DNA from: Octopus sinensis
Taxonomy: Eukaryota
NCBI RefSeq assembly: GCF_006345805.1
Contig: NC_042997.1
Coordinates: 81,468,001 to 81,532,000 of the forward strand
Length of the DNA: 64,000 nt
Direction of reading: 5' to 3'
The notes beneath the pieces were generated by a model. The model was not told the origin of the DNA. It was given only the letters and a program-made list of their open reading frames with translations, and did no database searches. Position 1 is the first letter of the stretch. Every line of letters begins with the position of its first letter. A program made the translations under genes and the position numbers. Below, in pieces: positions 11,463-46,829 of the stretch.

Positions 11463-13174
11463 ATTATTATTAACATCATATGTATGGGGTGGTAGGGAGA
11501 TTTAAGAAGGGAAAAGATTGTTGTGAGCCAGTGCTTAGCTACACTCAGGATGAGATGTACACAAGAGATAAGAGTGACTCAGTTCTGGATGTGAGTCTGG
11601 CACAGGTAATATTTCTACATGCTCTTGTGTCTATTTCTGGCTACCAGATGATGTTAGAAATATAAAACAAAGGGATTCTCTCAGAAACATGTTTAAATAA
11701 CAACAACAACAACAACAAGAGAACTAAGTAGCTATAAGTTGCAAGGTCCAGTACCTTATCCTTTTGACCACTTTGTCTTCTACTCTTTATCTTTCTCTAC
11801 AAAGAGAGAGAGAGAGAGAGAGGGAGAGAGAGTAACAACATGTGCATGTTCAGACAGGTACTGAAATCAAAATGAATAATTTAAAAACTAAATGAAGATT
11901 ATCATTATCTTTGTACATTATTTTGTACATGAAGTGGAAGAACTGGTCTAAAGCCAGGATGAATGTCTCAGAGCATTTACTAGTGACTTTCTACAATTTG
12001 AGTTCAAATTCTGATGGTTAACAAAACAAACATAGGTCATTAAGTAAGATGCTTACAGAGCGTAAACTCCTTTTCAGTAAATGTGTAACCATGTACTAAT
12101 AATGTAAATGATTAGTATTTTATTAATCTTTGATGTAATTTGAACTTGGAATAATGTAAAGATATTGTGAAATATCTTGTCAGTTGCTTCAGTCATAAAA
12201 ATTCTATTACTCATCTTATATAGGGCTGAGCCTTCTAGTTAATCACAGTGAACCCAATGTACTTCACATTCAGCTTATTTATGTGATATGGTACACTGTA
12301 TATCTATCTTCTCTACACATGTTTCATATAATCAACCTAAAAGTCAATAATGCTATTTATAAGCAACCACAAAACAAATACTTGTAAAGAATCCCTTTGT
12401 TGTTGTAATAAACCAAAGCCTTTCTCTTGAACTAACTGAAGAATCCTGCTCCTTACACTACTAACAATGCTTTCACACTCCTATCCATAATGATTAAGTT
12501 ACACAAATGTGATAGTTTATCAACTATTTCATGCTACAGCGGAGGAAATGTATAGAATGGATAGAACTATAGAGAGTGTCTGAAAAGATCTGTCAGTTGT
12601 GACAAGATATTTAAGGAACAGCAAGTTTTCATGTATTAACATGTGTGATTGTTTTCTCCCTTCCTTCACCCCTCTCCCTCTTTCCCTATCATCTCTCCAC
12701 ATACACACATATACATGAAACAACTGGATGGATAGACAAACTGAGTGGTAAATAAATAAATAAATAAATAAATAAATAGACAGAGACAGACAAATAGTAA
12801 ATTTATTCTTATCCTGTTCTAAAATAATTGGAACTCTTAAGAAAGTAACCCCTAGAAAAACAAATAAATAATAAAAATAATAATTTTGCATTTGCATTGG
12901 TTCAAATTTGGTGCCAAATGATAGTCCTAGCACCAGCCACCTGGTGTCAGCTGCAGTAAGTCACTCACATGTTTCATTTATAGTTTATCCATAATCAAGT
13001 ATTTCCCAAAATTTTCTTGGAATGTAACACTCATCAATAACAATGACTTTACTGATAGATCCAAGAGAGTATAGTACTCACCTTTAAGCAGAAAACAAGG
13101 ATGGGTCATTTGAAGTTTTCTTTCCTCAGTCAAGTACTAGATTATCTTCGCAATTTCAGCTGATTATATATATA

Positions 13175-14467
13175 CGAGGGGCGTTCAATAAGTAATGCCC
13201 CTGACCCACTTGCCATAGCAGTAGAGCAACGAAACTTGGCACAGTTATTAGTCTTTTTCTACATAGGAACCACCCAGAGTTACGCATTTCTCCCATCGTT
13301 TGATGCAGCTCTGAAGACCGTTTTTGTAGAAGACCCCAGCTTGGTCCTCCAACCACGATGTGACTTCAGAAATCAAGGCTGCATCATCTGGGAAACGCTT
13401 TCCTTTCAAAAACAACTTCATGGCTGGGAAGAGGTGAAAATCAGGGGATGCAGGTCAGGAGAGTAGGGAGAATGGGGGATGAGTTCATAGCCGCACGCCT
13501 GTGCTTCTGATCTGGCGACACGCGAGTTGTAGATCGGGGCGTTGTCCTGCAGGAGGAGGATGCCTTTGCTGATCTTGCCCCGCCTCTTGATTTTGATAGC
13601 TTCTCTTAATTTCCTCAAAAGTGAAGCATAATAGACTCCTGTAATTGTGGCACCCTTTGCCAAGAAATCTGTCATCACTACTCTGTCCTGGTCCCAGAAG
13701 ACTGTGAGCATGACCTTGCCAGCGGAGGGCTGCACCCTTGCCTTCTTTGGAGGAGGTGAGTCACGGTGCTTCCACTGCATTGACTGGGCTTTGGTCACTG
13801 GATCATAGTGATGGACCCAGGTTTCAACCTGTGTAATCAGTCTTTTGAAAAATTTTGACTCATCTTCTTGGCACATCTTCAAATTCATCCTCGCGCAATC
13901 GACGCGTTCTTGCTTCTGGAAAGGTGTGAGCAGCCTGGGAATCCATCTGGCAGACACCTTTTGCATATGCAAATGGTCATGAATGATAGTTTCCACAGAC
14001 CCGGTACTAATCTTGACCTCATGGGCTATTTGGCGAATAGTTATGCGTCAATCTTCCAAAATGGCAGCCTCAACTTGACGGAGAGATGCCTCATCAATGG
14101 CAGAAGGGGGGTTGACCAGATCTGGGAGCTGTTTCCACAGAGTTCCGACCATGTTTGAATTCACGATGCCAGCGTTTTACAAGGTCATATGATGAGGCAT
14201 CATCACCATAAGTTACTTTTATTTCATCAAAAGTCTCCCGTGGTGTGCGTCCTTTCAAATACAAAAACCGCATCACTGCTCGACACTCAACATGCTCCGT
14301 TTCACACCTGACTCAGTTCAAACACCTGTAAAGCAGAAACCACAATTAGTTCAGAGCTGTAATTTGCCACTTAATCTATAGAGATATAAATAATTGCTCA
14401 TGCAAAATTTCAGCTAGATCAAACAATTGCAAGTGGGTCAGAGGCATTACTTATTGAACGCCCCTCG
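13175..14467 (-). mobile_element. Full-length mariner transposon (1293 bp) with defective transposase
   Basis: TIRs CGAGGGGCGTTCAATAAGTAATGCC flanked by TA on both sides. WIPRLL, ITQ(V)ETWVHHY, LLQDNAP and HSPYSPDL motifs. First catalytic D reads V, start codon reads ACG, and there are frameshifts. Confidence 0.95.
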
Positions 14468-14607
14468 TATATATATATATATATATATATCAACAATCAA
14501 GGAACGGCCATAATAGGCCATTCACCCACTAGAAATAACAGCCAAAGCTTCAACCGCAAATAAAAGTCAATTCCGTAAACAGGAGAAAATTTAAAAAACA
14601 TTTACCC

Positions 14608-14725
14608 TGTAATTTCTTATACGATGCACCGTTTCGTCTGCTGTTTAATGGTAAACTAACCTGATTAAATTAAATCAAGCCAATCTTCCATAGGCCCTCA
14701 GATTCTTCAGTAAGAAATAGCCACA
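14608..14725 (-). ncRNA. Type I hammerhead ribozyme motif (unit 1)
   Basis: Minus strand reads UGUG-GCU-AUUUCUUA-CUGAAGA-A-UCUG-(58 nt)-CAGA-C-GAAA-CGG-UGCA-UCGU-A-UAAGAAAU-UACA. Conserved core, stem III, GUA triplet and perfect 8-bp stem I are all present. Position 10.1/11.1 is A.C instead of G-C. Confidence 0.82.
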
Positions 14726-15096
14726 AGTCGGAACAGATATTTTCACGAGGCATTTCCGACCCTGCCAAGTTAATATCTGACCTAAAATTTTCAAATCATC
14801 GCACTCGCGCCAAATTTATCGGCAGCAAATAAATATAAGCCGTCGATTCCATTACGGAATTAACCAGAAAATTCATAATTAATCAATATAGGGTGGCAAA
14901 AAAATTTTGTAGATTTTTTTGCCACCAGCGGCCTAGTGGGAAAAAATTAAATAGTCATGGACCATTTTTAAGTTCAACATCAACAATCAAGGAACGGCCA
15001 TAATAGGCCATTCACCACTAGAAATAACAGCCAAAGCTTCAACTGCAAATAAAAGTCAATTCCGTAAACAGGAGAAAATTTAAAAAACATTTACCC

Positions 15097-18000
15097 TGTA
15101 ATTTCTTATACGATGCACCGTTTCGTCTGCTGTTTAATGGTAAACTAACCTGATTAAATTAAATCAAGCCAATCTTCCATAGGCCCTCAGATTCTTCAGT
15201 AAGAATAGCCACAAGTCGGAACAGATATTTTCACGAGGCATTTCCGACCCTGCCAAGTTAATATCTGACCTAAAATTTTCAAATCATCGCACTCGCGCCA
15301 AATTTATCGGCAGCAAATAAATATAAGCCGTCGATTCCATTACGGAATTAACCAGAAAATTCATAATTAATCAATATAGGGTGCCAAAAAAATTTTGTAG
15401 AATTTTTTTGCCACCAGCGGCCGAGTGGGAAAAAATTAAATAGTCATGGACCATTTTTAAGTTCAACATCAACAATCAAGGAACGGCCATAATAGGCCAT
15501 TCACCCACTAGAAATAACAGCCAAAGCTTCAACTGCAAATAAAAGTCAATTCCGTAAACAGGAGAAAATTTAAAAAACATTTACCCTGTAATTTCTTATA
15601 CGATGCACCGTTTCGTCTGCTGTTTAATGGTAAACTAACCTGATTAAATTAAATCAAGCCAATCTTCCATAGGCCCTCAGATTCTTCAGTAAGAAATAGC
15701 CACAAGTCGGAACAGATATTTTCACGAGGCATTTCCGACCCTGCCAAGTTAATATCTGACCTAAAATTTTCAAATCATCGCACTCGCGCCAAATTTATTG
15801 GCAGCAAATAAATATACGCCGTCGATTCCATTACGGAATTAACCAGAAAATTCATAATTAATCAATATAGGGTGCCAAAAAAATTTTGTAGAATTTTTTT
15901 TGCCACCAGCGGCCTAGTGGGAAAAAATTAAATAGTCATAGACCATTTTTAAGTTCAACATCAACAATCAAGGAACGGCCATAATAGGCCATTCACCCAC
16001 TAGAAATAACAGCCAAAGCTTCAACCGCAAATAAAAGTCAATTCCGTAAACAGGAGAAAATTTAAAAAACATTTACCCTGTAATTTCTTATACGATGCAC
16101 CGTTTCGTCTGCTGTTTAATGGTAAACTAACCTGATTAAATTAAATCAAGCCAATCTTCCATAGGCCCTCAGATTCTTCAGTAAGAAATAGCCACAAGTC
16201 GGAACAGATATTTTCACGAGGCATTTCCGACCCTGCCAAGTTAATATCTGACCTAAAATTTTCAAATCATCGCACTCGCGCCAAATTTATCGGCAGCAAA
16301 TAAATATAAGCCGTCGATTCCATTACGGAATTAACCAGAAAATTCATAATTAATCAATATAGGGTGCCAAAAAAATTTTGTAGAATTTTTTTGCCACCAG
16401 CGGCCTAGTGGGAAAAAATTAAATAGTCATAGACCATTTTTAAGTTCAACATCAACAATCAAGGAACGGCCATAATAGGCCATTCACCCACTAGAAATAA
16501 CAGCCAAAGCTTCAACCGCAAATAAAAGTCAATTCCGTAAACAGGAGAAAATTTAAAAAACATTTACCCTGTAATTTCTTATACGATGCACCGTTTCGTC
16601 TGCTGTTTAATGGTAAACTAACCTGATTAATTAAATCAAGCCAATCTTCCATAGGCCCTCAGATTCTTCAGTAAGAAATAGCCACAAGTCGGAACAGATA
16701 TTTTCACGAGGCATTTCCGACCCTGCCAAGTTAATATCTGACCTAAAATTTTCAAATCATCGCACTCGCGCCAAATTTATCGGCAGCAAATAAATATAAG
16801 CCGTCGATTCCATTACGGAATTAACCAGAAAATTCATAATTAATCAATATAGGGTGGCAAAAAAATTTTGTAGAATTTTTTTGCCACCAGCGGCCTAGTG
16901 GGAAAAAATTAAATAGTCATAGACCATTTTTAAGTTCAACATCAACAATCAAGGAACGGCCATAATAGGCCATTCACCCACTAGAAATAACAGCCAAAGC
17001 TTCAACCGCAAATAAAAGTCAATTCCGTAAACAGGAGAAAATTTAAAAAACATTTACCCTGTAATTTCTTATACGATGCACCGTTTCGTCTGCTGTTTAA
17101 TGGTAAACTAACCTGATTAAATTAAATCAAGCCAATCTTCCATAGGCCCTCAGATTCTTCAGTAAGAAATAGCCACAAGTCGGAACAGATATTTTCACGA
17201 GGCATTTCCGACCCTGCCAAGTTAATATCTGACCTAAAATTTTCAAATCATCGCACTCGCGCCAAATTTATCGGCAGCAAATAAATATAAGCCGTCGATT
17301 CCATTACGGAATTAACCAGAAAATTCATAATTAATCAATATAGGGTGCCAAAAACATTTTGTAGAATTTTTTTTGTCACCAGCGGCCTAGTGGGAAAAAA
17401 TTAAATAGTCATAGACCATTTTTAAGTTCAACATCAACAATCAAGGAACGGCCATAATAGGCCATTCACCCACTAGAAATAACAGCCAAAGCTTCAACCG
17501 CAAATAAAAGTCAATTCCGTAAACAGGAGAAAATTTAAAAAACATTTACCCTGTAATTTCTTATACGATGCACCGTTTCGTCTGCTGTTTAATGGTAAAC
17601 TAACCTGATTAAATTAAATCAAGCCAATCTTCCATAGGCCCTCAGATTCTTCAGTAAGAAATAGCCACAAGTCGGAACAGATATTTTCACGAGGCATTTC
17701 CGACCCTGCCAAGTTAATATCTGACCTAAAATTTTCAAATCATCGCACTCGCGCCAAATTTATCGGCAGCAAATAAATATAAGCCGTCGATTCCATTACG
17801 GAATTAACCAGAAAATTCATAATTAATCAATATAGGGTGGCAAAAAAATTTTGTAGAATTTTTTTGCCACCAGCGGCCTAGTGGGAAAAAATTAAATAGT
17901 CATAGACCATTTTTAAGTTCAACATCAACAATCAAGGAACGGCCATAATAGGCCATTCACCCACTAGAAATAACAGCCAAAGCTTCAACCGCAAATAAAA

Positions 18001-19142
18001 GTCAATTCCGTAAACAGGAGAAAATTAAAAAAAATTTACCCTGTAATTTCTTATACGATGCACCGTTTCGTCTGCTGTTTAATGGTAAACTAACCTGATT
18101 AAATTAAATCAAGCCAATCTTCCATAGGCCCTCAGATTCTTCAGTAAGAAATAGCCACAAGTCGGAACAGATATTTTCACGAGGCATTTCCGACCCTGCC
18201 AAGTTAATATCTGACCTAAAATTTTCAAATCATCGCACTCGCGCCAAATTTATCGGCAGCAAATAAATATAAGCCGTCGATTCCATTACGGAATTAACCA
18301 GAAAATTCATAATTAATCAATATAGGGTGGCAAAAAAATTTTGTAGAATTTTTTTGCCACCAGCGGCCTAGTGGGAAAAAATTAAATAGTCATAGACCAT
18401 TTTTAAGTTCAACATCAACAATCAAGGAACGGCCATAATAGGCCATTCACCCACTAGAAATAACAGCCAAAGCTTCAACAGCAAATAAAAGTTAATTCCG
18501 TAAACAGGAGAAAATTTAAAAAACATTTACCCTGTAATTTCTTATACGATGCACCGTTTCGTCTGCTGTTTAATGGTAAACTAACCTGATTAAATTAAAT
18601 CAAGCCAATCTTCCATAGGCCCTCAGATTCTTCAGTAAGAAATAGCCACAAGTCGGAACAGATATTTTCACGAGGCATTTCCGACCCTGCCAAGTTAATA
18701 TCTGACCTAAAATTTTCAAATCATCGCACTCGCGCCAAATTTATCGGCAGCAAATAAATATAAGCCGTCGATTCCATTACGGAATTAACCAGAAAATTCA
18801 TAATTAATCAATATAGGGTGCCAAAAACATTTTGTAGAATTTTTTTTGTCACCAGCGGCCTAGTGGGAAAAAATTAAATAGTCATAGACCATTTTTAAGT
18901 TCAACATCAACAATCAAGGAACGGCCATAATAGGCCATTCACCCACTAGAAATAACAGCCAAAGCTTCAACCGCAAATAAAAGTCAATTCCGTAAACAGG
19001 AGAAAATTTAAAAAACATTTACCCTGTAATTTCTTATACGATGCACCGTTTCGTCTGCTGTTTAATGGTAAACTAACCTGATTAAATTAAATCAAGCCAA
19101 TCTTCCATAGGCCCTCAGATTCTTCAGTAAGAAATAGCCACA
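15097..19142 (-). ncRNA. Nine further hammerhead motifs, one per unit
   Basis: 15097-15213 (one A missing in stem I), 15587-15704, 16079-16196, 16570-16686, 17060-17177, 17552-17669, 18042-18159, 18533-18650, 19025-19142. Core nucleotides are the same in all. Confidence 0.8.
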
Positions 19143-19715
19143 AGTCGGAACAGATATTTTCACGAGGCATTTCCGACCCTGCCAAGTTAATATCTGACCT
19201 AAAATTTTCAAATCATCGCACTCGCGCCAAATTTATCGGCAGCAAATAAATATAAGCCGTCGATTCCATTACGGAATTAACCAGAAAATTCATAATTAAT
19301 CAATATAGGGTGGCAAAAAAATTTTGTAGAATTTTTTTGCCACCAGCGGCCTAGTGGGAAAAAATTAAATAGTCATAGACCATTTTTAAGTTCAACATCA
19401 ACAATCAAGGAACGGCCATAATAGGCCATTCACCCACTAGAAATAACAGCCAAAGCTTCAACCGCAAATAAAAGTCAATTCCGTAAACAGGAGAAAATTT
19501 AAAAAACATTTACCCTGTAATTTCTTATACGATGCACCGTTTTGCCACCCTATATTGATTAATTATGAATTTTCTGGTTAATTCCGTAATGGAATCGACG
19601 GCTTATATTTATTTGCTGCTGATAAATTTGGCGCGAGTGCGATGATTTGAAAATTTTAGGTCAGATATTAACTTGGCAGGGTCGGAAATGCCTCGTGAAA
19701 ATATCTGTTCCGACT

Positions 19716-19833
19716 TGTGGCTATTTCTTACTGAAGAATCTGAGGGCCTATGGAAGATTGGCTTGATTTAATTTAATCAGGTTAGTTTACCATTAAACAG
19801 CAGACGAAACGGTGCATCGTATAAGAAATTACA
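19716..19833 (+). ncRNA. Type I hammerhead ribozyme motif (inverted unit 1)
   Basis: Stem I 19723-30/19822-29; CUGAAGA 19731-37; stem II 19739-42/19801-04; GAAA 19806-09; GUA 19819-21, predicted cut after 19821. Confidence 0.82.
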
Positions 19834-20206
19834 GGGTAAATGTTTTTTTAATTTTCTCCTGTTTACGGAATTGACTTTTATTTGCGGTTGAAGCTTTGGC
19901 TGTTATTTCTAGTGGGTGAATGGCCTATTATGGCCATTCCTTGATTGTTGATGTTGAACTTAAAAATGGTCTATGACTATTTAATTTTTTCCCACTAGGC
20001 CGCTGGTGGCAAAAAAATTCTACAAAATTTTTTTGCCACCCTATATTGATTAATTATGAATTTTCTGGTTAATTCCGTAATGGAATCGACGGCTTATATT
20101 TATTTGCTGCCAATAAATTTGGCGCGAGTGCGATGATTTGAAAATTTTAGGTCAGATATTAACTTGGCAGGGTCGGAAATGCCTCGTGAAAATATCTGTT
20201 CCGACT

Positions 20207-20324
20207 TGTGGCTATTTCTTACTGAAGAATCTGAGGGCCTATGGAAGATTGGCTTGATTTAATTTAATCAGGTTAGTTTACCATTAAACAGCAGACGAAA
20301 CGGTGCATCGTATAAGAAATTACA
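20207..20324 (+). ncRNA. Type I hammerhead ribozyme motif (inverted unit 2)
   Basis: CUGAAGA 20222-28, GAAA 20297-300, predicted cut after 20312, exactly 491 nt after the previous site. Confidence 0.82.
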
Positions 20325-20689
20325 GGGTAAATGTTTTTTAAATTTTCTCCTGTTTACGGAATTGACTTTTATTTGCGGTTGAAGCTTTGGCTGTTATTTC
20401 TAGTGGGTGAATGGCCTATTATGGCCGTTCCTTGATTGTTGATGTTGAACTTAAAAATGGTCTATGACTATTTAATTTTTTCCCACTAGGCCGCTGGTGG
20501 CAAAAAAATTCTACAAAATTTTTTTGGCACCGTATATTGATTAATTATATATATATATATATATACACATACATACAAATGCAAGCAAAGCAATATCAGC
20601 TTGAAACATAATGCAAGTTCTGCAAGTGAAGCAAACAATGAACAATTCTTCACACGACATGACATAACTTTTGTCTTGCATCTTCTATC

Positions 20690-20894
20690 TTTTACTTGCT
20701 TCAGTCATTAAACTGCAACCCTGCTGGAACATCACCTTGAAGAATTTTTAGCCAAATGATTTGACCCAAGTACTTATTTTTTGTTGAAGCTGGTATTTAC
20801 TCTATTGGTTCCTTTCACTGAGTAGCAAAGTTATGGGGACATAAACACACCATCATTAGTTGTTCAGCAGTAGTGGGGGACAAACACAATGACA

Positions 20895-20900
<6 letters not shown>
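20690..20900 (-). mobile_element. SINE family A tail fragment
   Basis: tttacttgcttcagtcattaaactgc...gcaaagttatggggacataaacacacc matches family A tails. Confidence 0.65.
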
Positions 20901-20964
<64 letters not shown>

Positions 20965-20980
<16 letters not shown>

Positions 20981-21195
20981 TGAGAATGTGTGTCTGTCTG
21001 TCTGTTTCCCTAAAACTTGAGAACTACACAACCAATTTCATTCAAATTTTACACATGCCTTACTTGGGGTCCATGTAGTGTCATGGGCAAAAAAAATGTT
21101 CAACTTCTTGCCTAGGGCGAGCTCATAGCAATATCATATCTTCTCCACTATTTCAGTATTACATGTTAAAAGTGAAACAAAAACATCTCTCTATT
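20965..21195 (+). mobile_element. Non-autonomous Helitron-like 5' fragment
   Basis: (TA)nTAAAA start followed by (CTGT)n, a common non-autonomous Helitron 5' signature. A related copy lies at 24811-25048. No 3' hairpin/CTRR found. Confidence 0.55.
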
Positions 21196-21533: not shown

Positions 21534-23187
21534 AGTCGTTTTCTGGCACCTGTGTGTAATTGCTTTGCCTGTTATTGTTTATTAAATTTTGTTAAATAGT
21601 ATTGTTGAATCTTGTCTGTCTGTATTGAGATAAACAAGGAAAAACCAGTTTGCCCCTCCCTAAGGGAGAAAATGGCAAGGAAAAATGTTTTTTACAAGCC
21701 TCAGTGAGTCGGACCTGTCGACCTCTGAGGAGGAACTGGAAAAGGCAGTGAGAAAATTGGACAGAGCACTCGAAGAAAAAATAACATACGTGCAAACGAC
21801 GAAGTCAATGGAAAAAGAGATAGACCTGGCTAAGTTGCCAGGTTATCAAAAATTTGTTACGAAAGTCGGTGGTGAAGTTGAATTGTCGCCGCCAAGGAAA
21901 AGAAGAGACTGGTATGAGAAGAGGACCATTACGTATAGAGTATTTGCCAACAAAAAAAGGAGAATAGAGTTGGTCGGCATGGAAATGGTAAAGGAAGCAC
22001 TGAGAATAACGGAAAAGGAGGTAGCGTTTCTCGCAAGAGGCGTTGGGTACAGCACCGTGGTTTTACAATTTAAAACTGAAAAAATGGCAAGGAGAAGGTC
22101 GGCGAAAACAATAAAGTCAGAGAAGGTATTCCTTCTGCCCTCGTATCTGGGAAGGAGGACGACCCGGATCAGGGTGGAAAGAATACCACCAGACATAGAC
22201 GGAGAGTGGATTATGGCAGCTATCATCAGTGCTAATGAAGATAAGGTGGACATTCTTCATGCCACGGTGAAGGACGAGGGAGGATGAAGAGGAGCAGTAC
22301 TGGAGATGAATGTCCAGGCGGAATCGGAGGTGTTGAAACAACTGGCCGAGAATATAACAATGGGAAACATCATTATGAGAGTATGGGTGGAGGGCAGAGC
22401 TCCTCGTTGTTACAAATGTGGCTTGAAGGGCCACATAAGAGCTAACTGTCCTCCCCCAACAAAAGAACAAAGAAAAGAACCAGCAAGAGAGGTAGAGGAA
22501 CCCCAGGAGGAGCAGAATACAGCGGAAGAGAAGCAAGTGGACAAGGAGGAATTACTAGCAGAATGGGAATCCATGGGAAGAAGGAGGAAGAGAAGGAGAA
22601 AAAAGCAAACTGTTCTGAACCCCAACCCACCTCATCACCACCCGCACCCTTTGTAGCCCACCCTTCCTCTGCAGATACTGAACCCACCTGCTCCCCACCA
22701 AGAAAACAAAAAAAAGATAACACAGACACACAGGATAACTTTTAAAATTCTTGTCCCCATATATTAGGTGTAATAAACAAGGAAGAAATATGTGAAATAT
22801 TGAGGGACTGGGGAAAGGGGGAATTGCAAGACAGCTGGGATATGGCGGGGTTGATGTATGTAGTAATATCAGAGGACCAAGAAAACGAACTCAAGGAAAA
22901 ACTTTAAAAAAGTTATAAATTGATTAGGAAAATAATTGAACTGGATAAGAGATATGAACTGGAATAAATATATGGGATGAAACTGGAGGACTACTTGTTT
23001 TTTATATTGATATAGGGAAGAAGGACAGGTAAGTGATGTTATCGGATGGGGCCGTTAACATCGTTTTCATTTCTCATTTTCTCAATTTTTCATCTTTCAT
23101 ACGTTTCTGTATTTTTGTGATGTTTTGTGTCCCCAATGTTTGTAATGCCCCCCTCTATGTAAGCCCTTTATAGGTAATAAAAAATAA
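21534..23187 (+). mobile_element. ORF1-only (gag-like, CCHC zinc knuckle) non-LTR-type element
   Basis: One ORF1-like frame, then about 500 bp, then AATAAAAAATAA at ~23177. No endonuclease or RT motifs. 5' end inferred from similarity to the start of the next element. Confidence 0.55.
21685..22656 (+). pseudogene. ORF1/gag-like protein with a single in-frame TGA (22285-87) and CX2CX4HX4C knuckle
   Basis: ORFs 21685-22287 and 22306-22656 are in the same frame (...DEGG*RGAVLEM...). RCYKCGLKGHIRANC is followed by an acidic then basic tail (RRRKRRRKK). Confidence 0.75.
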
Positions 23188-23188
23188 G

Positions 23189-24050
23189 TAATGTCTGTTT
23201 TCTTGAACATACGCTTCCACTGAGTACTGCTTTTGGTTTATTTCTTATCCATAAAGGGCTATAGCTTTTGCTGAGTACTGCTTTTTGATTCACCATAAGG
23301 TTTGTTATTATTATTATTACTGTTTAACTATTATCACATTTGTTGGTTCCTCGTAAGGGAAGCGTTGTTGTGTTGCATTTGTTAAATAATTGTAAACCGT
23401 AACCCTCCCCCTTTGAGAGAAGAAGCTTTGGTTATTGTTTAAAAATTGAATTGTGTCCCTGTTTGGGGAAATTGACAATATTTTCACCGTTTATATGGAA
23501 GTATTTTTGTTAATATGCCTTCGATAGAAGAAAGTCCAAAAATGAATTTCGCTGCAGCCATCGGCGGGCGCGAACTCATTAAAATTAAAATGGAAGAAAT
23601 ACAAACCTATTTCGGAATGATCCCCGACAAAGACGGTAAATCTAGGATAACACCACAAACGAAATAAAAAATTAAATTAAAGAAAAGACTATTGTCTATA
23701 AAGTATACAATGTAGAGAAAAAAAAAAGATTTGAACACCTGGAGGAAAGCACCATCGAAAAGTGTCTTGGTGCGACTATGAAAGATATCAAGTATCTAAC
23801 TAGAGGCGGTAAATTCACCACAATAGAAGCAAGGTTCGAGTCAACGGAGCGTGCAAGGGAGTACTCGACTCGAACCTTGCAAAGTGGAAATATTTTATTT
23901 CTACCTTTATATCTGGGACGTAGGACATCCCTGATAAAAATTTAAAATGTCCCCCCAGAAGTAGAGGTAGGCTGGATTGTAGCCACACTTCTATACAAGA
24001 GGGAGGACAAGATACAATTGATCGAAATTGCAAGAGACAGACCTACAATT
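23189..24050 (+). pseudogene. Second, diverged ORF1/gag-like copy, 3'-truncated
   Basis: Frame from 23679: KEKTIVYKVY..KKKRFE...YLTRGGKFTTI..F...FLPLYLGRRTSLIKI*NVPPEVEVGWIVA aligns by eye with EKRTITYRVF..KKRRIE...FLARGVGYSTV..F...LLPSYLGRRTTRIRVERIPPDIDGEWIMA of the upstream ORF. Confidence 0.75.
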
Positions 24051-24220
24051 CCAGTCTGTTATATATTTTGAGTATTGTTATCACTAGCGATATCAAGATA
24101 TAACTTTGTATTTTGTATTTTATGTGTAGATATATATATATAGATGTACATGTAATATGTACACATATATATATACACATATATACATGCATAATATAGC
24201 CACCCATACACACATACATA

Positions 24221-24357
24221 GGAGCAGGTGTGGCTGTGTAGTAACAAACTACGTTCCAAACACATGGTCCTGGGTTCAGTCCCACTGTATGGTGACTTGG
24301 CATGTGTCTTCTGCTATAGCCTCAGACCAACCAAAGCCTTCTCAGTGGATTTTGTAC
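24221..24357 (+). mobile_element. SINE family A head
   Basis: ggagcaggtgtggctgtgtagtaa (A box)...gggttcagtccc (B box)...gtgtcttctgctatagcc. Confidence 0.8.
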
Positions 24358-24810
24358 ATATATACAGGCATACATACATATATATACGTGCATATGTACA
24401 TATTCAGCATAAACACTCTACCACTACTACTAATAACTGTTGGGAACACTTTCAAACCTGCCTTATATTCGAACCGGAATCTCAAAAACATTGTCCTCTT
24501 ACATCTCATTCTCATTTCATTCCCAACACAGAGAAATAAAACTTACTTCTCACTACAGGACAATGGAAGATGGTAACAGATATTTACCACATCCTGCCTT
24601 ATCAAGTGAAGTATATTGTCATCCACTTCACCTCTAACCTTCATAGCGTAGGGACAATTCAAATGACCCCACACCACTATACCACCACTGATACCTTCAT
24701 CCTTCTAGCTGTCTACTTTCTTATAAATACGACAGAATTCATTTCCAGCCAAATAATATTCGCAACACAATTCATAATCACTCCGTCCGTTCCTATTACT
24801 ATTTCTCTCG

Positions 24811-25047
24811 TCTATATATATAAAAGTGAGAATTGTGTCTGTCTGTCTGTCTTTGTGAATCCCTAAAACTTGAGAACTACACAACCGATTTCATTCAAAT
24901 TTTAGACATGCCTTACTTAGGGTCCATGTAGTGCTATAGGCAAAACAAAATGTTTAACTTCTTGCCTAGAGCGAGCCCACAGCAATATCATATCTCCTCC
25001 TCTATTTCAGTCTTATGTGTTAAAAGTGAAACAAAAACATCTCTCTA

Positions 25048-25048
<1 letters not shown>
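24811..25048 (+). mobile_element. Non-autonomous Helitron-like fragment, related to 20965-21195
   Basis: TCTATATATATAAAA start, (CTGT)n, and shared cctaaaacttgagaactacacaacc body. Confidence 0.6.
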
Positions 25049-25097
<49 letters not shown>

Positions 25098-25112
25098 ATA
25101 TATGGATGTATA

Positions 25113-25203
<91 letters not shown>

Positions 25204-25260
25204 ATATATATATAGCTGTATATGTATACATGTATATGTATAGATGTATTTCTATAGATA
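25048..25260. repeat. (TA)n-rich microsatellite (representative of many (TA)n, (CA)n, (TATG)n, (TAA)n and (GAT)n tracts)
   Basis: Direct reading. These tracts generate most of the YI-, VC-, THT- and SL-repeat ORFs in the track. Confidence 0.95.
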
Positions 25261-25395
25261 TACATGTATGTGTATACATGTATATCTAGATGTATATATA
25301 TATAAATGTACATGTAATATGTACATATATATACACCCATATACACACATACACACATACCCACACACACACACACGCACGCACACACATACATA

Positions 25396-25715
25396 GGTGC
25401 AGGTGTGGCTGTGTGGTAACAAACTTGGTTCCAAAACACATGGTCCTCAGTTCAGTCCCACTGTGTGGTAACTTGGCATGTGTCTTCTGCTATAGCCTCA
25501 GACCAACCAAAGCCTTGTCAGTGGATTTTGTAGACAGAAACTGAAAGAAATCAATTGTATGTATATGTATATATGTAAGTCTATGTCTGTGTCTTTGTGT
25601 TTCTCTCTCATCACTGCTTCACAACTGGTGTTTGTTTATTTACATACCCATAACTTACTGGGTTCACAAGAAGAAACTGATAGAATAAGCACCAGGCTTA
25701 TCAAAATATAAAAAA
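25396..25715 (+). mobile_element. SINE family A
   Basis: Head, core and partial tail. Shares private variants with the 24221 copy. Confidence 0.8.
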
Positions 25716-25802
25716 GCACTACGCAGTGTCTCATATTTTTGTTTGCCCACTCAGTTGTATCTATCAATTTATCTTGTGTGTGTGTGTGTGTGTGTGTGTG
25801 TA

Positions 25803-25864
<62 letters not shown>

Positions 25865-25910
25865 GGATTTCGTAGACAGGAACTGAAACAAATCAATCGT
25901 ATATATATGT

Positions 25911-28548
25911 GTGTGTTTTGGTATTGGCAACATGAATGACAATGGTCAGAGACTACTTGAATTTTGCACATACCATAACCTGTGCATCACTAACACATTC
26001 TTTGCCAACAAGACATCCCACAAGGCATCTTGGAGACATCCAAGATCGCACCACTGGCATCAGCTGGATCTCATCATTACACGAAGATCCTTTCTGAATT
26101 CTGTTCAACTGACCCATAGTTACCACAGCATGGATTGTGATACAGATCATTCACTAATAAGAAGCAGGGTGAGGATTCTGCCTAAAAAAGACCATCACGC
26201 CAAGAAAATGGGCCGACTACGCATTAACACTGCCAGAACCTCGGACCCTACACTGCGACAATGTTTTGCCGTTTCTATCAAGGTTGCCCTCAGTAGCTGC
26301 CCAACCTCCTCTGCTGAAAGTAGGTGGAATTATATTAGGGAAGCTTTGTATACCATATCAATAGATACTTTCGGCATGAGAGAAAGACAAAACCCAGATT
26401 GGTTCAGTGCTGGGCTCTCAGAGCTGGAAGCAGTTATCGAAGCAAAGCGTGCTGCTCTGATGCTATACAAAAGTGATTCTTCTACAAAGTCACTCGAAGA
26501 ACTCAGAAAGGCAAGAAATAAAACCCAACTGACTGCCAGACGCTGTGCAAATAGGTATTGGCAGGAAATCTGTCAGAGCATCCAGTCAGCTGCTGACAGT
26601 GGCGACACCCGTGGGATGTATGCCGGTTTGAAGAAGGCCCTCGGTCCATCCACAACCAAGTAAGCCCCTCTGAAATCAACTACTGGAGATCTCATCAAGG
26701 ACCAAAGCAAGCAGATGGATAGATGGGTGGAGTACTACCAGAATCTCTACTCACGGGAGACCACGGTAGCTGAGTCTGCAATCGAATCTTGCCAGTCATG
26801 TGCGAACTTGACAGTCTGCCATCTATAGCAGAGCTCACCATGGCTATTGACTCCCTAGAAAGTAACAAGGCTCCGGGAAAAGACAGCATCCCCTTAGAGA
26901 TCATCAAAACCAGCAAAAACATCATCCTGCTTTGGCACCTTCATGAGCTTCTGTGTCAGTGCTGGGAAGAGGGTACAGTCTTTCAGGATATGCGGGATCC
27001 TAATATGATTACGATTTACAAATACAAAGGTGACCGTGATGATCGTAACAATTACCATGGAATATCGCTTCTAAGCACTGTTGGAACGGCCTTTGCTCAC
27101 ATTATCCTGTCCAGGCTACAACTGCTAGCTTCTCGAATTTATCCAGAATTGCAGTGTGGCTTTAGAAGAAGTAGATCAACTATTGAAATGATATTCTCCA
27201 TACGCCAACTTCAGGAGAAGTCCAGAGAGCAGAAAATGCCATTATATATGGCTTTCATTGATCAAACACAGGCCTTTGACTTGGTAAGTAGAAAAGGCCT
27301 CTCCATCCTGCTCCAAAATATCGGATGTTCACCAAAGCTGCTGAGGATCATCAAATCTTTCCATGATGATCTGCAAGGCAACATGCAGCACAATGGTTCA
27401 ACATCAGCCGCCTTCCAAATAAAAAATGAGGTAAAGCAAGGTTTTGTCCTTGCTCCTACATTATTTGGTATCTTCTTGCTGCTGCTGTCACATGCCTTTG
27501 AAACATCAGATGATGGAGTATTTCTGCACAGTAGAAGTGATGGGAAACTGTTCAATCTCTCGTGTCTGCATGCCAAGACCAAAATCAGAAGCGTCCTGAT
27601 CTAGGAGATGCTATTTGCTGATGATGCCACTCTGGTATCACACACAGAAAAAGCCATACAAAGGCTCATCAAGCATGTGGCAACTTTGGCTTAGTTATCA
27701 GCCTCAAGAAGACCAACATCATGGGTCAGGCTACATCAGACATCCCAAACATACATATTGGAGATCACAGACTACAAGAGGTGGAGAAGTTTACCTATCT
27801 TGGCTCTACCGTCACCTACAACCTATCCCTTGATGTTGAGCTCAATAAGCTGACCAAGACCACAAAAATGAAGATTTACCAGGCATGTGTACTTAGCACT
27901 CTACTGTATGGAAGTGAGACTTGGATGCCATACACACACCAAGAGCTTCACCTAAATATCTTTCACCTGTGCTGCCTCTGGAAAATCCTTCGCATCAAAT
28001 GGCAGAATCATGTCCCCAACAAAGATCTCCTCAAGCAAGCAGGAATACCAAGCATGTTTGCACTCCTCACACAAAGACATATGAGATGGCTTGGACATGT
28101 ATGGAAGATGGCAGAATCCCCAAGGACATACTCAACGGAAAGCTTGCTAGGGGCACTAGATCTGTGGGAAGACCGTTCTTACGATACAAGGATATTTGCA
28201 AAAGGGACATGAATGCCTGCAACATCAATATTACCAACTGGGAAGCAGTTGCCAGCAACCGTGGACATTGGTGACGTACCATAAAAGAGGGAACACAAAG
28301 GAGTGACATAGAGAGAAAGAGAAGAAATGGAAAGACAAGAAAAGACGTCAACAAGAAACTATGACATTACAACCAGCCAGGCAAAGTCTTCGTTATATTT
28401 GCGACACCTGCCAGAGGGAGTGTTTGCCCAGGATAGGACTACACAGCCAAAGCAGCAAATGTATTAGGACATGAAATGTAAAAGCCAGACTAGATTATTT
28501 TATGCACAATTCCATTGTCTTCCGAGACAAAAAGGATGCCAACAACAA
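25911..28548 (+). mobile_element. 5'-truncated RTE (BovB-like) LINE with (CAA)n tail, ORF disrupted
   Basis: End of endonuclease (HWHQLDLIITRR, DTDHSLI), RT (NYHGISLL, QCGFRRSRST, VKQGFVLAP, LFADD) and tail gatgccaacaacaa. Flanked by an identical 50-54 bp direct repeat. Confidence 0.92.
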
Positions 28549-34807: not shown

Positions 34808-35255
34808 TATAATTATAAATAAGGGCAAAAGAAAAAAATTTTCAATGCCAACAAGCTAAAAAATAGACTTTAGATCATCTAACTACATACAATATTTTTC
34901 ACTATAAACACACAGCATGTTGAAACAATGAAAGCAAGCAAACAGAAATTTTTTAAATTCGTTATTCTAGGATTTGACCGTTTTCTGGATTAATCCAAAA
35001 GGATTCTTCCTTCTTCAGTGAGAAATGAAGTGTTTCTTGCTGAAGAAGGAAGAATCCTTTTGGATTAATCCAGAAATCAGTTTGATTTGGGAATAACGAA
35101 TTTTAAAAAAATTTTGTTAGCTCGCTTTCCTCATTTCAGCACACTGTGTATTTATAGTGAAAAATAATTGAATGTGGTTAGACAATCTAAAGTCTATTTT
35201 TCAGCATGATGGCATAGAAATTTCTTTTCTTTTGCCCTTGTTTTTAATTGTTTAT
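34808..35255. mobile_element. ~450-bp fold-back element, probably back-to-back PLE pseudo-LTRs, with a decayed hammerhead-like core in each arm
   Basis: Arms of about 215 bp are reverse complements to within a few bases of the centre (~35028). Each arm reads CUGAAGA-A-GGA...UCC-A-GAAA outward from the centre. Confidence 0.6.
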
Positions 35256-35592: not shown

Positions 35593-37740
35593 ATCATCAT
35601 CATCATCATCATCATCATCATCGTTTAACGTCCGTTTTCCGCGCTAGCACGGGTTGGACGGTTCGACCGGGGTCTGGGAAGCCAGGGCCCGCTCCAGGCT
35701 CCAGTCTGATTTGGCAGAGTTTCTACGGCTGGATGCCCTTCCTAACGCCAACCACTCCGTGAGTGGATTGGGTGCTTTTTACGTGCCACCTGCACAGGGG
35801 CCGGGGGGTCCGGCATCGGTCACGATCGGCTCGAGCTTTTAACGTGCCAGCGGCACGGGGGCAACTGGGTCCAGGGTACTTTGGGGATCCGGGGTACTTT
35901 GAATGGGTAGGGGGTATGTGGAATTGCTGCAGAAAGCAGCCCGGGTCTTTGCAGTCACAGCATATCTCCAGAGATCTTGGTCCTTCGCCATTGCCTCAGT
36001 GAGGCCCAATGCTCTGAGGTCATGCTTGACTACCTCATCCCATGTCTTCCTGGGTCTACCTCTCCCCCTGATACCTTCAACTGTTTGGGAGTGGCACTTC
36101 TTCACACATCTCTCTTCATCCATCCGCAGCACATGACCATACCATCGCAAGCGTCGCTCTTGCACACCACATCTGATGCTTCTTATATCCAGCATTTCTC
36201 TTAGGATGCTTACACTCTGTCTTGCGTGCACACTGACACTACACATCCAGCGGATCATGCTAGCTTCATTTCTTTCAAGTCTACGCATGTCCTCTGCAGT
36301 CACAGCCCATGTTTCATTACCGTGAAGCATGGCAGTTCGCACACATGCATCATACAATCTACCTTTCGCTCTGAGGGAGAGACCTTTTGTTGCCAGTAGG
36401 GGTAGGAGCTTTCTGAACTTTGCCCAGGCTATTCGTATTCTAGTGGTGATACTCTCTGTGCATCCACCTCCGCTACTAACTTGGTCACCCAGGTAGCGGA
36501 AACTATCAACTACTTCTAGTTTCTCTCCCTGGAGTGTGATGGACTCTGTTTTCTGAGTGTCTGTTGTGTCTATTGTCCCTGTGCATCTGCCGCACATGAA
36601 AGCTATCCTATCTGTTAATTTCCCTTTAATGTTGCTGCACCTCTTATGTGTCCATAACTTACATTGGGTGCATCTTATGGAGTTTCTACCTGTACCTTTC
36701 CTACAGATTGAGCAGGGCCACCTACCCGAGGGGGTGTGTGCTGAGTACCTCTTGCTGCTTACTAATACTTTGGTCTTTGCTACATTTATTCTAAGGCCCT
36801 TTGATTCCAACCCTTGCTTCCACACCCGAAATTTCTCTTCTAGTTCCGGTAGTGATTCTACTATGAGAGCTAGGTCATCGGCATAGAGGAGCTCCCAGAG
36901 GCATCCCGTTTTGAATTCCTCTGTTATTGCCTGAAGGACTATGATGAATAAAAGGGGACTGAGGGCTGAGCCCTGGTGCACACCTACTTCTACCCGGAAT
37001 TCTTCACTATATTCGTTGCCAATCCTAACCTTGCTGACAGCCTCTCTGTATAGAGCCTGTACAGCCCTTATTAGCCATTCTTCAATCTCCAGTTTCCACA
37101 TCGACCACCAGATGAGGGAACGGGGAACCCTGTCAAAGGCTTTCTCCAAGTCTACAAAAGCTATGTAGAGGGGTTTATCTTTAGCTAGGTACTTCTCCTG
37201 CAGTTGTCGGACCAGGAATATAGCATCAGTGGTGCTTCTACCTGGTACAAAACCGAACTGCATTTCATCTAAACAAATTCTCTCCTTAATGAGATGGGTT
37301 ATGACCTTCTCTGAGACCTTCATCACCTGGTCCAACAGTTTGATACCTCTGTAGTTATTTCTATCTAGAGCATCACCCTTACCCTTGTAGCAGTTGACTA
37401 TGGTGCTGCTGCACCAGTCATTGGGTATGACTCCATTGTGAACTACCTGGTTTACAATGCGGGTGACTATGGTATAGCCCACATAGCCAGCTGTTTTAAG
37501 CATCTCAGCAGTGATTCCTGATAGGCCAGGGGCTTTGCCTGGTTTCATATCCTTAATTGCCTTATCTACAAGGGAGCTGTCTATTCGGGTAGCTTGTCCC
37601 TCTACTGGGTCAACATTTGGCAGGCTCTCCTCCTCCCATTCATTCTCCTCATTCAGCAGTCTTTCATAATGGCTTCTCCAAGCCTCTTTCTTTTCACTAG
37701 CAGTAAAAGCAAGTGCCCCATCATCCATGCGGACACATTT
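35593..37740 (-). mobile_element. Young 5'-truncated RTE family 2 LINE
   Basis: (ATC)n tail at 35593; uninterrupted RT-containing frame; no endonuclease domain present. Confidence 0.93.
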
Positions 37741-37758
37741 ATATAAAACTATATTCAT
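35839..37758 (-). pseudogene. Open 639-codon frame: RT + PHD-like Cys/His module + C-terminus (endonuclease missing)
   Basis: NYRGIKLL, QFGFVPGRSTTDAIF, FVDLEKAFDRV, GVHQGSALSP, LLYADD, then CSIC...CTQC..WTHKRC...CGRC. The N-terminal MNIVLY comes from flanking DNA, so it is probably not a real start. Confidence 0.88.
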
Positions 37759-46814: not shown

Positions 46815-46829
46815 TATCTATGTGGTGAA

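What the first reader, a model, noticed from the sequence alone, without database searches (positions are those of the whole stretch)
19716..19833. A type I hammerhead ribozyme is hidden in every unit of the 491-bp tandem array
Seen: AUUUCUUA (19723-30) pairs perfectly with UAAGAAAU (19822-29) to form stem I, which extends across a GCU bulge (UGUG/UACA). CUGAAGA follows, then stem II UCUG/CAGA, then GAAA, then stem III ACGG-UGCA-UCGU and A17, giving a GUA cleavage triplet. Twelve complete copies exist (10 on minus, 2 on plus). Established: CUGANGA, GAAA, NUH and three helices define hammerheads, and an open stem I defines type I. Inference: the repeat is not passive satellite DNA but encodes a self-cleaving RNA. 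I do not recognise this family and cannot check whether it has been reported.
Basis: partly seen in the sequence, partly recalled or inferred. Interest (0 to 1): 0.95.

Follow-up and report, generated by a model that had tools for sequence, protein, structure and literature searches.

The report
Hammerhead ribozyme motif in animal tandem repeat
Every unit of a 491-bp tandem repeat in this animal (probably crustacean) genome carries a statistically convincing but slightly unorthodox self-cleaving "hammerhead" RNA motif, which makes it a new example of an already well-known class of ribozyme-bearing repeats (animal retrozymes) rather than a new kind of thing.

Summary
Ten copies are identical and two carry 1-nt deletions.

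The match is far beyond chance. A descriptor scan finds only these 12 sites in the window. In 1600 simulated windows nothing reached stem I of 7 bp or more. A generic type I hammerhead covariance model built from synthetic sequences scores each copy 37 bits (E~1e-8), against 15 bits for the next-best hit.

Rfam finds nothing, most likely because helix II is a 62-nt hairpin that short models cannot span.

Two features are unorthodox: an A·C mismatch at the usually G-C 10.1/11.1 pair, and no canonical loop 1/loop 2.

The context matches animal non-LTR retrozymes: non-coding, 36% GC, a strongly self-paired unit (z=-4.9), and an array inserted in a (TA)n tract.

No relatives were found anywhere, and the copies are about 99% identical. 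Conservation, covariation and cleavage are therefore all untested.

Verdict: probably a genuine type I hammerhead in a retrozyme-like repeat, a new member of a known kind. Its activity is unproven.

The parts
14489..19542 (-). Minus-orientation sub-array of the 491/492-bp unit: 10 full units plus a 131-nt partial at the left end and a 15-nt partial at the inversion junction
   Evidence: TRF period 492, 10.3 copies, 99% matches. BLAST of the monomer against the window gives unit boundaries at 98.4-99.4% identity.
19540..20548 (+). Plus-orientation sub-array: 282-nt partial, one full unit (19822-20312), 236-nt partial
   Evidence: TRF period 491, 2.1 copies; BLAST.
19716..19833 (+). Reference hammerhead copy (118 nt). 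Stem I is 19716-19719/19830-19833 plus 19723-19730/19822-19829, with the GCU bulge at 19720-19722. Core CUGAAGA is 19731-19737. A10.1 is 19738. Helix II hairpin is 19739-19804. C11.1 is 19805. G12-A14 are 19806-19808. Helix III is 19809-19820 (ACGG-UGCA-UCGU). A17 is 19821. The predicted cut lies between 19821 and 19822.
   Evidence: Sequence. Constrained fold -28.7 against MFE -29.5 kcal/mol. Synthetic model R2 aligns 19725-19827 end to end at 37.1 bits.
20207..20324 (+). Hammerhead copy, identical to the reference; predicted cut 20312|20313
19025..19142 (-). Hammerhead copy, identical to the reference; A17 at 19037
18533..18650 (-). Hammerhead copy, identical
18042..18159 (-). Hammerhead copy, identical
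17552..17669 (-). Hammerhead copy, identical
17060..17177 (-). Hammerhead copy, identical
16570..16686 (-). Hammerhead copy with a 1-nt deletion in the apical loop of helix II (117 nt)
   Evidence: R2 score 34.5 bits
16079..16196 (-). Hammerhead copy, identical
15587..15704 (-). Hammerhead copy, identical
15097..15213 (-). Hammerhead copy with a 1-nt deletion in the 5' strand of stem I (AUUCUUA). The uninterrupted part of stem I drops to 6 bp.
   Evidence: the descriptor reports stem I = 6
14608..14725 (-). Hammerhead copy, identical
19528..19542 (-). Truncated 13th copy: only AAACGGUGCAUCGUA (unit positions 477-491), cut inside GAAA at the head-to-head inversion junction. The 3 nt TTT/AAA at 19540-19542 are shared with the plus sub-array, which begins at unit position 210.
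14468..14489 (.). (TA)11 tract abutting the left end of the array. A mariner copy at 13173-14470 ends in it.
20546..20565 (.). (TA)10 tract abutting the right end of the array

Best explanation
The 6-kb array is a retrozyme-like tandem repeat of an animal genome, probably a malacostracan crustacean. Each 491-nt unit encodes one type I hammerhead ribozyme of unusual build:
- Helix I has 8 bp, a GCU bulge, then 4-6 more bp.
- The catalytic core is fully consensus.
- Helix II is a 66-nt rod-like hairpin whose first pair is an A·C mismatch.
- Helix III has 4 bp and a UGCA loop.

Proposed mechanism:
1. The sense strand is transcribed. That is the window's minus strand for 10 units and the plus strand for 2.
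2. Each hammerhead in the multimeric RNA cuts after GUA17. This releases 491-nt monomers that begin UAAGAAAU with a 5'-OH and end CAUCGUA with a 2',3'-cyclic phosphate.
3. The monomers fold into a highly base-paired RNA that keeps both ends together in helix I.
4. They can then be circularised by an RtcB-type tRNA ligase.
5. They may be copied back into DNA by the reverse transcriptase of an autonomous element (LINE or Penelope-like), giving tandem insertions such as this one in a (TA)n tract.

Shown here: the motif, its statistical significance, its thermodynamic accessibility, the structured non-coding unit, and the (TA)n-flanked insertion.

Inferred from the known biology of animal retrozymes: transcription, cleavage, circularisation and retrotransposition.
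For: - Coordinates and pairings are verified.
- All hammerhead core positions are consensus. Model R2 flags only one non-standard pair, 10.1/11.1.
- The descriptor finds only the 12 copies in 64 kb. In 1600 simulated windows there were 8 hits with stem I of 5 bp or more, 2 with 6 bp or more, and none with 7 or 8 bp. By extrapolation that is about 4e-5 per window and about 3e-7 per repeat unit.
- A candidate-blind synthetic type I model with an uninformative 60-nt spacer scores 37.1 bits, E about 1.7e-8, against 15.3 bits for the next-best hit.
- The hammerhead fold is 0.8 kcal/mol above the MFE. Forcing only the core to be unpaired regenerates all three helices.
- Helix II folds as predicted in the unconstrained MFE; z = -2.7 for the 118-mer.
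- The circular 491-nt sense RNA folds at -140.1 kcal/mol against -107.9 +/- 6.5 for shuffles (z = -4.9). Helices I and II are retained in that fold.
- The unit is non-coding, with a longest stop-free stretch of 52 codons, and has 36% GC.
- Both ends of the array abut (TA)n.
- The literature gives direct precedents. Type I hammerheads sit in 150-450-bp tandem repeats across animals, crustaceans included, and are expressed as circRNAs (PMC7229834). Retrozyme consensus lengths range from 51 to 972 bp. Natural hammerheads with a mismatched 10.1/11.1 pair exist.
Against: - No Rfam hammerhead model reports the site even at E<=10 on a 151-nt slice.
- The 10.1/11.1 pair is A·C in all copies. The documented natural mismatch is U·U, said to be the best-tolerated one, so activity may be low or absent.
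- There is no canonical loop 1/loop 2 pair. Helix II, about 27 bp, is far longer than the 4-5 bp typical of type I hammerheads.
- Copies are about 99% identical. Only 2 of 19 variable columns fall in the motif against 4.6 expected, which is not significant. So there is no evidence of selection on the motif.
- No relatives were found in metagenome, viral or prokaryote-genome DNA, or in the protein collection.
- There are no expression data, and only one array is visible.
Confidence: 0.65

Rival explanations
1. The motif descends from a real hammerhead, but the present sequence is catalytically dead or nearly so. The causes would be the G10.1-to-A change and an overgrown helix II without loop-loop contacts. 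The array would now persist and grow only by DNA-level processes such as unequal crossing-over, replication slippage or eccDNA reinsertion, as ordinary satellite DNA.
For: - A·C at 10.1/11.1 in all 12 copies.
- This pair is described as the most conserved one after 15.1-16.1, with U·U the best-tolerated mismatch.
- A weak 3-unit higher-order pattern of shared variants suggests in situ block duplication.
- The variable sites give no sign of constraint on the motif.
Against: - Every other core position and all three helices are intact in every copy, and 10 of the 12 copies are identical.
- A still has the N7 that G10.1 uses for metal binding, and an A+·C wobble is isosteric with G·U (general knowledge).
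- The axolotl HHR_Amex2, with a U·U mismatch at the base of helix II, still cleaves, and does so efficiently as a dimer.
- The array looks like a discrete insertion in (TA)n rather than an old decaying satellite.
Confidence: 0.28
2. Chance resemblance: a hairpin-rich satellite unit happens to place CUGANGA, GAAA and UH around a three-way junction and has no evolutionary link to hammerheads.
For: - Rfam is silent.
- The unit is rich in hairpins, which makes helices cheap.
- By extrapolation, a genome of gigabase size would contain on the order of one chance match at this stringency somewhere.
Against: - The expected number of matches in this 491-bp unit is about 3e-7.
- The synthetic model gives E about 1e-8, or about 1e-6 after allowing for the post hoc choice of spacer length.
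- The match lies in exactly the genomic context where type I hammerheads are known.
Confidence: 0.03
3. The hammerhead is real but does not act alone. It would need two units (a double hammerhead) or a protein or ionic cofactor, as in newt and axolotl repeats, so that only multimeric transcripts are processed.
For: - Vertebrate retrozyme hammerheads cleave poorly as monomers and well as dimers.
- The mismatch at the base of helix II parallels HHR_Amex2.
Against: Dimeric action in those cases is tied to a very short helix III of 1-2 bp. Here helix III has 4 bp and a tetraloop, like the efficiently self-cleaving invertebrate motifs.
Confidence: 0.04

Closest known systems
Animal non-LTR retrozymes (type I hammerhead tandem repeats of corals, mussels, axolotl and many invertebrates including crustaceans; Cervera & de la Pena 2020, PMC7229834; Li et al. 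2026 preprint)
   Same: - One type I hammerhead per unit of a short, non-coding, AT-rich tandem repeat.
- A highly self-paired monomer RNA.
- The array looks like a discrete insertion with long repeated flanks.
- Helix III of several bp, as in invertebrate motifs.
- The unit length of 491 bp lies within the reported 51-972 bp.
   Different: - Helix II is a 66-nt rod instead of 4-5 bp plus a loop.
- The first helix II pair is A·C.
- Stem I is 8 bp up to its bulge.
- There are no recognisable loop 1/loop 2 nucleotides.
- The sequence matches no known family.
- Only one array has been seen.
- Expression and circularity are untested.
pDo500 satellite of Dolichopoda cave crickets (Rojas et al. 2000; PMC2837043)
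   Same: An arthropod satellite of almost the same unit length (463-505 bp) with one hammerhead per unit. Transcripts are processed to monomers.
   Different: The pDo500 hammerhead is a compact 49-nt motif (68 nt extended) with C1.1-G2.1 and a G10.1-C11.1 pair that covaries. The present motif is 118 nt, has U1.1-A2.1 and A·C, and is not detected by Rfam's Hammerhead_1.
Newt satellite 2 and Schistosoma Sm-alpha hammerheads (the classical Rfam Hammerhead_1 type)
   Same: Type I topology, the same catalytic core, and residence in transcribed repeats.
   Different: Those have short helices II and III and defined loop-loop contacts. This one has a long helix II and a stable helix III, and Rfam gives no match at E<=10.
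Minimal hammerheads in the pLTRs of Penelope-like elements (PMC4209133)
   Same: Type I hammerheads linked to retroelements. Proposed as the parents of non-LTR retrozymes.
   Different: PLE motifs are minimal variants arranged in tandem inside an autonomous element. No PLE reverse transcriptase or GIY-YIG ORF was seen in this window; the RTs present belong to APE-type LINEs.

Membership tests
Hammerhead ribozyme, type I | Conserved 5' core C3-U4-G5-A6-N7-G8-A9 | tested here: met
   CUGAAGA at 19731-19737 in all 12 copies
Hammerhead ribozyme, type I | Conserved G12-A13-A14, A15.1-U16.1 pair, and a non-G residue at position 17 | tested here: met
   GAA at 19806-19808; A19809 pairs with U19820; A17 at 19821, giving the GUA triplet
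Hammerhead ribozyme, type I | Three helices around the core, with helices II and III closed and helix I open | tested here: met
   The constrained fold at -28.7 against MFE -29.5 kcal/mol regenerates all three helices. Full-length alignment to the generic type I model.
Hammerhead ribozyme, type I | Watson-Crick 10.1-11.1 pair (usually G-C) closing helix II | tested here: not met
   A19738 and C19805 are flagged as a non-standard pair. Natural exceptions with U·U are known, so this is quasi-conserved rather than absolute.
Hammerhead ribozyme, type I | Tertiary contact between loop or bulge of helix I and loop of helix II | tested here: inconclusive
   There is no canonical loop 2. The GCU bulge (8 bp from the core) and a 4x4 internal loop in helix II (about 8 pairs from the core) lie at matching distances. 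Nothing could be tested for lack of covariation data.
Hammerhead ribozyme, type I | Detection by curated covariance models (Rfam RF00163 and related) | tested here: not met
   No hammerhead hit at gathering score or at E<=10. A short synthetic model also fails to span the motif. The same model with a 60-nt spacer scores 37 bits.
Hammerhead ribozyme, type I | Core conservation and compensatory changes in the stems among relatives | tested here: inconclusive
   The copies are nearly identical: 2 of 19 variable columns lie in the motif against 4.6 expected. No relatives were found.
Hammerhead ribozyme, type I | Site-specific self-cleavage giving 5'-OH and 2',3'-cyclic phosphate ends | not testable with these tools
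   Needs in vitro transcription or RNA from the organism
Animal non-LTR retrozyme | Tandem units of a few hundred bp, each with one type I hammerhead, non-coding, GC below 50%, no LTR/PBS/PPT | tested here: met
   Unit of 491 bp, 12 motifs; GC 36%; longest stop-free stretch 52 codons; no tRNA-like element
Animal non-LTR retrozyme | Monomer RNA predicted to be highly self-paired | tested here: met
   Circular fold -140.1 kcal/mol, z = -4.9, 60% of bases paired
Animal non-LTR retrozyme | Target-site duplication flanking the array | tested here: inconclusive
   (TA)11 on the left and (TA)10 on the right. This fits either a duplicated target or an insertion into a pre-existing microsatellite. No empty site is available.
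Animal non-LTR retrozyme | Many dispersed arrays in the genome and abundant linear and circular monomer RNAs | not testable with these tools
   Only this window is available. There is no second locus in it.
pDo500 satellite (Dolichopoda) | Compact 49-nt hammerhead with C1.1-G2.1 within a unit of 463-505 bp | tested here: not met
   The unit size is similar, but the motif is 118 nt with U1.1-A2.1, and there is no Rfam Hammerhead_1 hit.

The most novel reading that the evidence does not exclude
This may be a distinct, functional hammerhead architecture that current annotation misses. In it a long rod-like helix II, with an internal loop taking over the role of loop 2, and an A+·C wobble at 10.1/11.1 would give a working, perhaps pH- or metal-tuned, ribozyme. 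On this reading the array itself would be a molecular fossil of one retrotransposition event from a multimeric or circular ribozyme RNA. The signs are its head-to-head inversion with 3-nt microhomology, both sense 3' ends facing outward, and (TA)n on both flanks, which is the geometry expected from twin priming during target-primed reverse transcription.
Probability: 0.2. Interest if true: 0.55.

Novelty: new member of a known kind. Interest (0 to 1): 0.35.

Why it matters
If the motif cleaves, the repeat is a source of small self-processed, possibly circular, RNAs rather than inert satellite DNA. It would add a crustacean-type family to the animal retrozymes.

The practical lesson is methodological. 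Rfam's five hammerhead models give no hit at all, yet a descriptor, or a model that tolerates a long helix II, finds the motif with very high significance. Model-based genome annotation may therefore undercount hammerheads with expanded peripheral helices.

The A·C at 10.1/11.1 offers a natural test of how strictly that pair is needed in a full-length ribozyme.

The (TA)n-flanked, head-to-head array is a useful specimen for working out how such repeats are inserted.

None of this changes the established picture, so the finding is of moderate interest.

Tried and rejected
1. Rfam at gathering score on the whole window, at E<=10 on 14000-21000, and at E<=10 on 19700-19850. There was no hammerhead hit, only weak miRNA and CRISPR-repeat noise from low-complexity and palindromic DNA.

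2. My first gapped pattern search used too small a gap and found nothing.

3. Within-array variation as a test of constraint. Two of 19 variable columns fall in the motif against 4.6 expected, which is uninformative.

4. Search for relatives, all negative:
- Two metagenome scans, one viral scan and two prokaryote-genome scans with the 3' half and the 5' half of the motif. The only hits were the same 21-mer in a Nitrosopumilales coding region (L002 = L005), a chance match.
- Exact look-up of the 39-aa ORF of the unit.
- A protein search with all stop-free six-frame stretches of the unit joined together.
- A full-text search for the motif strings.

5. Organism identification.
- The RT ORF was uninformative.
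- The mariner ORF gave its best named relatives in Oratosquilla (86%), Scylla (79%) and Penaeus (57-61%). A malacostracan crustacean is therefore likely but not proven, since mariners can transfer horizontally.
- The contig look-ups gave no organism names.

6. pDo500 identity was considered because of the unit size. It was rejected because that hammerhead is a different, compact motif.

7. tRNA- or SINE-like origin: no tRNA was found.

8. A first synthetic spacer alignment was staggered by MAFFT and discarded.

9. One literature search on decapods was badly posed and returned nothing relevant.

Full report
**What is there**

The window is eukaryotic. It holds many microsatellites, decayed LINE reverse transcriptases with APE-type endonuclease, and mariner remnants. 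It has no tRNA genes and no Rfam family at gathering score. The best named relatives of a mariner ORF are in Oratosquilla oratoria (86%), Scylla paramamosain (79%) and Penaeus (57-61%). A malacostracan crustacean is therefore the likely source, with the caveat that mariners move horizontally.

Between 14489 and 20548 lies a tandem array of a 491/492-bp unit. There are 10.3 units in minus orientation (14489-19542) and 2.1 units in plus orientation (19540-20548). The units are 98.4-99.4% identical to one another.

**Check of the observation**

- Distal stem I: UGUG 19716-19719 with UACA 19830-19833. It can be extended by two more pairs.
- GCU bulge: 19720-19722.
- Proximal stem I: AUUUCUUA 19723-19730 with UAAGAAAU 19822-19829, 8 perfect pairs.
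- Core: CUGAAGA 19731-19737.
- Helix II: UCUG 19739-19742 with CAGA 19801-19804.
- GAAA: 19806-19809.
- Helix III: ACGG-UGCA-UCGU, 19809-19820.
- A17: 19821.

The 118-nt motif occurs 12 times, 10 on the minus strand and 2 on the plus strand. Ten copies are identical. One has lost a U in the 5' strand of stem I (15097-15213). One has lost a U in the apical loop of helix II (16570-16686). A thirteenth copy is cut off inside GAAA at the inversion junction (19528-19542).

- A19738 (position 10.1) and C19805 (11.1) cannot form a standard pair.
- The sequence between the helix II strands is not a loop. It continues helix II as a long imperfect hairpin: 4 bp, a tandem A·G/G·A, one G-C, a 4x4 internal loop, 4 bp, a 1x1 mismatch, 14 bp and a 6-nt loop.
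- Rfam sees nothing there.

**Is it more than chance?**

I wrote a deliberately permissive type I descriptor. It requires CUGANGA, then helix II of at least 3 bp with a mismatched first pair allowed and up to 90 nt in all. It then requires GAAA, helix III of at least 3 bp with a loop of at most 12 nt, then UH and stem I.

In the real window the descriptor hits only the 12 array copies. In 1600 simulated 64-kb sequences with the window's dinucleotide statistics it gave:
- 43 hits with stem I of 3 bp or more;
- 8 with 5 bp or more;
- 2 with 6 bp or more;
- none with 7 or 8 bp;
- one hit in 1600 windows when helices II and III of at least 4 bp and stem I of at least 5 bp were all required.

By extrapolation, a match as good as the real one is expected about 4e-5 times per window, or about 3e-7 times per repeat unit.

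As an independent test I built covariance models from 40 synthetic sequences. These carry only the textbook consensus: fixed core, randomly covarying stems and random loops. No candidate sequence went into them.
- The compact version (R1, 47 positions) cannot span the site and returns only an 11-bit truncated local alignment.
- The same design with 60 uninformative loop-2 columns (R2) aligns all 12 copies end to end at 37.1 bits, or 34.5 for the copy with the loop deletion. The rough E-value is 1.7e-8.
- The next-best hit in the window scores 15.3 bits. It is an unrelated palindrome at 34990-35085.
- Allowing a factor of about 90 for choosing the spacer length after the fact still leaves E near 1e-6.
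- The only pair R2 flags as non-standard is 10.1/11.1.

This contrast also explains the Rfam silence. The curated models are probably built on compact hammerheads and cannot accommodate a 62-nt insertion in helix II. I could not inspect the Rfam models directly, so this last step is an inference.

**Folding**

- The unconstrained MFE of the 118-mer is -29.5 kcal/mol (z = -2.7). It already contains stem I and the long helix II.
- The full hammerhead fold costs only 0.8 kcal/mol more, at -28.7.
- Forbidding pairing of the 13 core residues is enough to make all three helices appear.
- The whole 491-nt unit, folded as a circle, reaches -140.1 kcal/mol against -107.9 +/- 6.5 for dinucleotide shuffles (z = -4.9, 60% of bases paired). 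Helices I and II are kept in that fold.
- The antisense strand is also structured (z = -5.4) but 36 kcal/mol weaker in absolute terms.

**Context**

- The unit is non-coding, with a longest stop-free stretch of 52 codons, and has 36% GC.
- Both ends of the array abut TA microsatellite: (TA)11 at 14468-14489 and (TA)10 at 20546-20565. Such tracts cover under 2% of the window. The array therefore looks like a discrete insertion into a (TA)n site, or one with a (TA)n target duplication.
- A mariner copy (13173-14470) ends in the left tract.
- The two sub-arrays meet head to head. The minus one starts at unit position 477 and the plus one at position 210, sharing 3 nt. Both sense 3' ends point outward. 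This geometry is what twin priming during target-primed reverse transcription produces. That reading is my inference. Fold-back rearrangement or misassembly are alternatives.
- Shared variants hint at a 3-unit higher-order period.

**What could not be tested**

- With about 99% identical copies, the variable sites say nothing about constraint: 2 of 19 lie in the motif against 4.6 expected.
- No relatives were found. I tried five collection scans with motif patterns, an exact ORF look-up, a six-frame pseudo-protein search of the 5.8-billion-protein collection, and a full-text search of papers.
- The only DNA hits were one 21-mer in a Nitrosopumilales coding region, present in two collections.
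- Conservation, covariation and activity therefore remain open.

**Comparison with what is known**

- Type I hammerheads inside tandem repeats of 150-450 bp are widespread in animals, from cnidarians to amphibians and including crustaceans. They are now interpreted as non-LTR retrozymes whose transcripts self-cleave, are circularised (most likely by an RtcB-type tRNA ligase) and accumulate as abundant circRNAs (PMC7229834).
- A 2026 preprint reports retrozyme consensus lengths of 51-972 bp and links these elements to Penelope-like elements.
- The present repeat meets the structural criteria of that class: unit size, composition, non-coding nature, one type I motif per unit, a self-paired monomer and repeated flanks.
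- It differs in the ribozyme's periphery. Helix II has about 27 pairs where 4-5 bp is typical. There is no recognisable loop 1/loop 2. The 10.1/11.1 position is A·C.
- Perreault et al. describe 10.1/11.1 as the most conserved pair after 15.1-16.1. They note that natural U·U mismatches occur and are the best-tolerated mismatch.
- The axolotl HHR_Amex2 has such a mismatch. It cleaves weakly alone (22% in 1 h) but efficiently as a dimer.
- The cricket pDo500 satellite has nearly the same unit length (463-505 bp) but a compact 49-nt hammerhead with different stems, so this is not that family.

**Verdict**

The motif is real and almost certainly of hammerhead descent. The chance explanation gets about 3%.

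The most likely account (0.65) is a functional type I hammerhead in a retrozyme-like repeat. The main rival (0.28) is a relic crippled by the A·C mismatch and the overgrown helix II.

This is a new member of a known kind. Its interest lies in the atypical architecture, in its invisibility to standard annotation, and in the informative structure of the array, not in the principle.

Noticed in passing
window 14468-14489 and 20546-20565: The whole 6-kb array is bracketed by (TA)11 and (TA)10. It therefore looks like one discrete insertion into a TA microsatellite, or one with a TA-repeat target duplication, rather than an array that grew in place.
   Followed up: partly
window 19528-19545: Head-to-head inversion junction. 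The minus sub-array begins at unit position 477, inside the GAAA of the ribozyme. The plus sub-array begins at unit position 210, inside a palindrome. They share 3 nt (TTT), and both sense 3' ends point outward. This fits twin priming, but it could also be a fold-back rearrangement or an assembly error.
   Followed up: partly
window 20005-20040 (and the same place in every unit): A 36-nt near-perfect palindrome, GGTGGCAAAAAAATTCTACAAAATTTTTTTGCCACC, in each unit. It causes the weak mir-5728 'hits' in Rfam and carries several of the variable sites, including a C/G polymorphism split 7:6 among units.
   Followed up: no
window 15599-19036: Shared variants (alignment columns 188, 190, 209, 216) and unit lengths of 492/491/490 recur every third unit. 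This hints at a roughly 1.47-kb higher-order repeat.
   Followed up: partly
window 13173-14470 and 45534-46817: Two copies of one mariner family. They are 91-92% identical to a 218-kb ENA contig (L003) and 93-94% identical to a Logan contig. The best named protein relatives are in the mantis shrimp Oratosquilla and the crab Scylla, which is the only clue to the source organism.
   Followed up: partly
window 21685-28212: A LINE lies 1.1 kb to the right of the array. It has a gag-like ORF1 (200 aa) followed by a CCHC zinc-knuckle ORF, then endonuclease and RT fragments, and is interrupted by long microsatellites. Further RT-PHD LINE fragments lie at 35839-37758, 49449-49859 and 56121-57101. No Penelope-like element was seen.
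   Followed up: partly
window 34990-35085: An inverted repeat of about 38 bp per arm that happens to contain CUGAAGA. It is the second-best hit of the synthetic hammerhead model (15.3 bits) but has no hammerhead 3' half. It may be a foldback or MITE-like element.
   Followed up: partly
L002 2233-2253 and L005 2822-2842: The 21-mer TTACTGAAGAATCTGAGGGCC occurs by chance in a protein-coding region of a marine Nitrosopumilales archaeon. The same sequence is present in both the metagenome and the genome collection, at 99.7% identity. It is unrelated to the repeat.
   Followed up: yes
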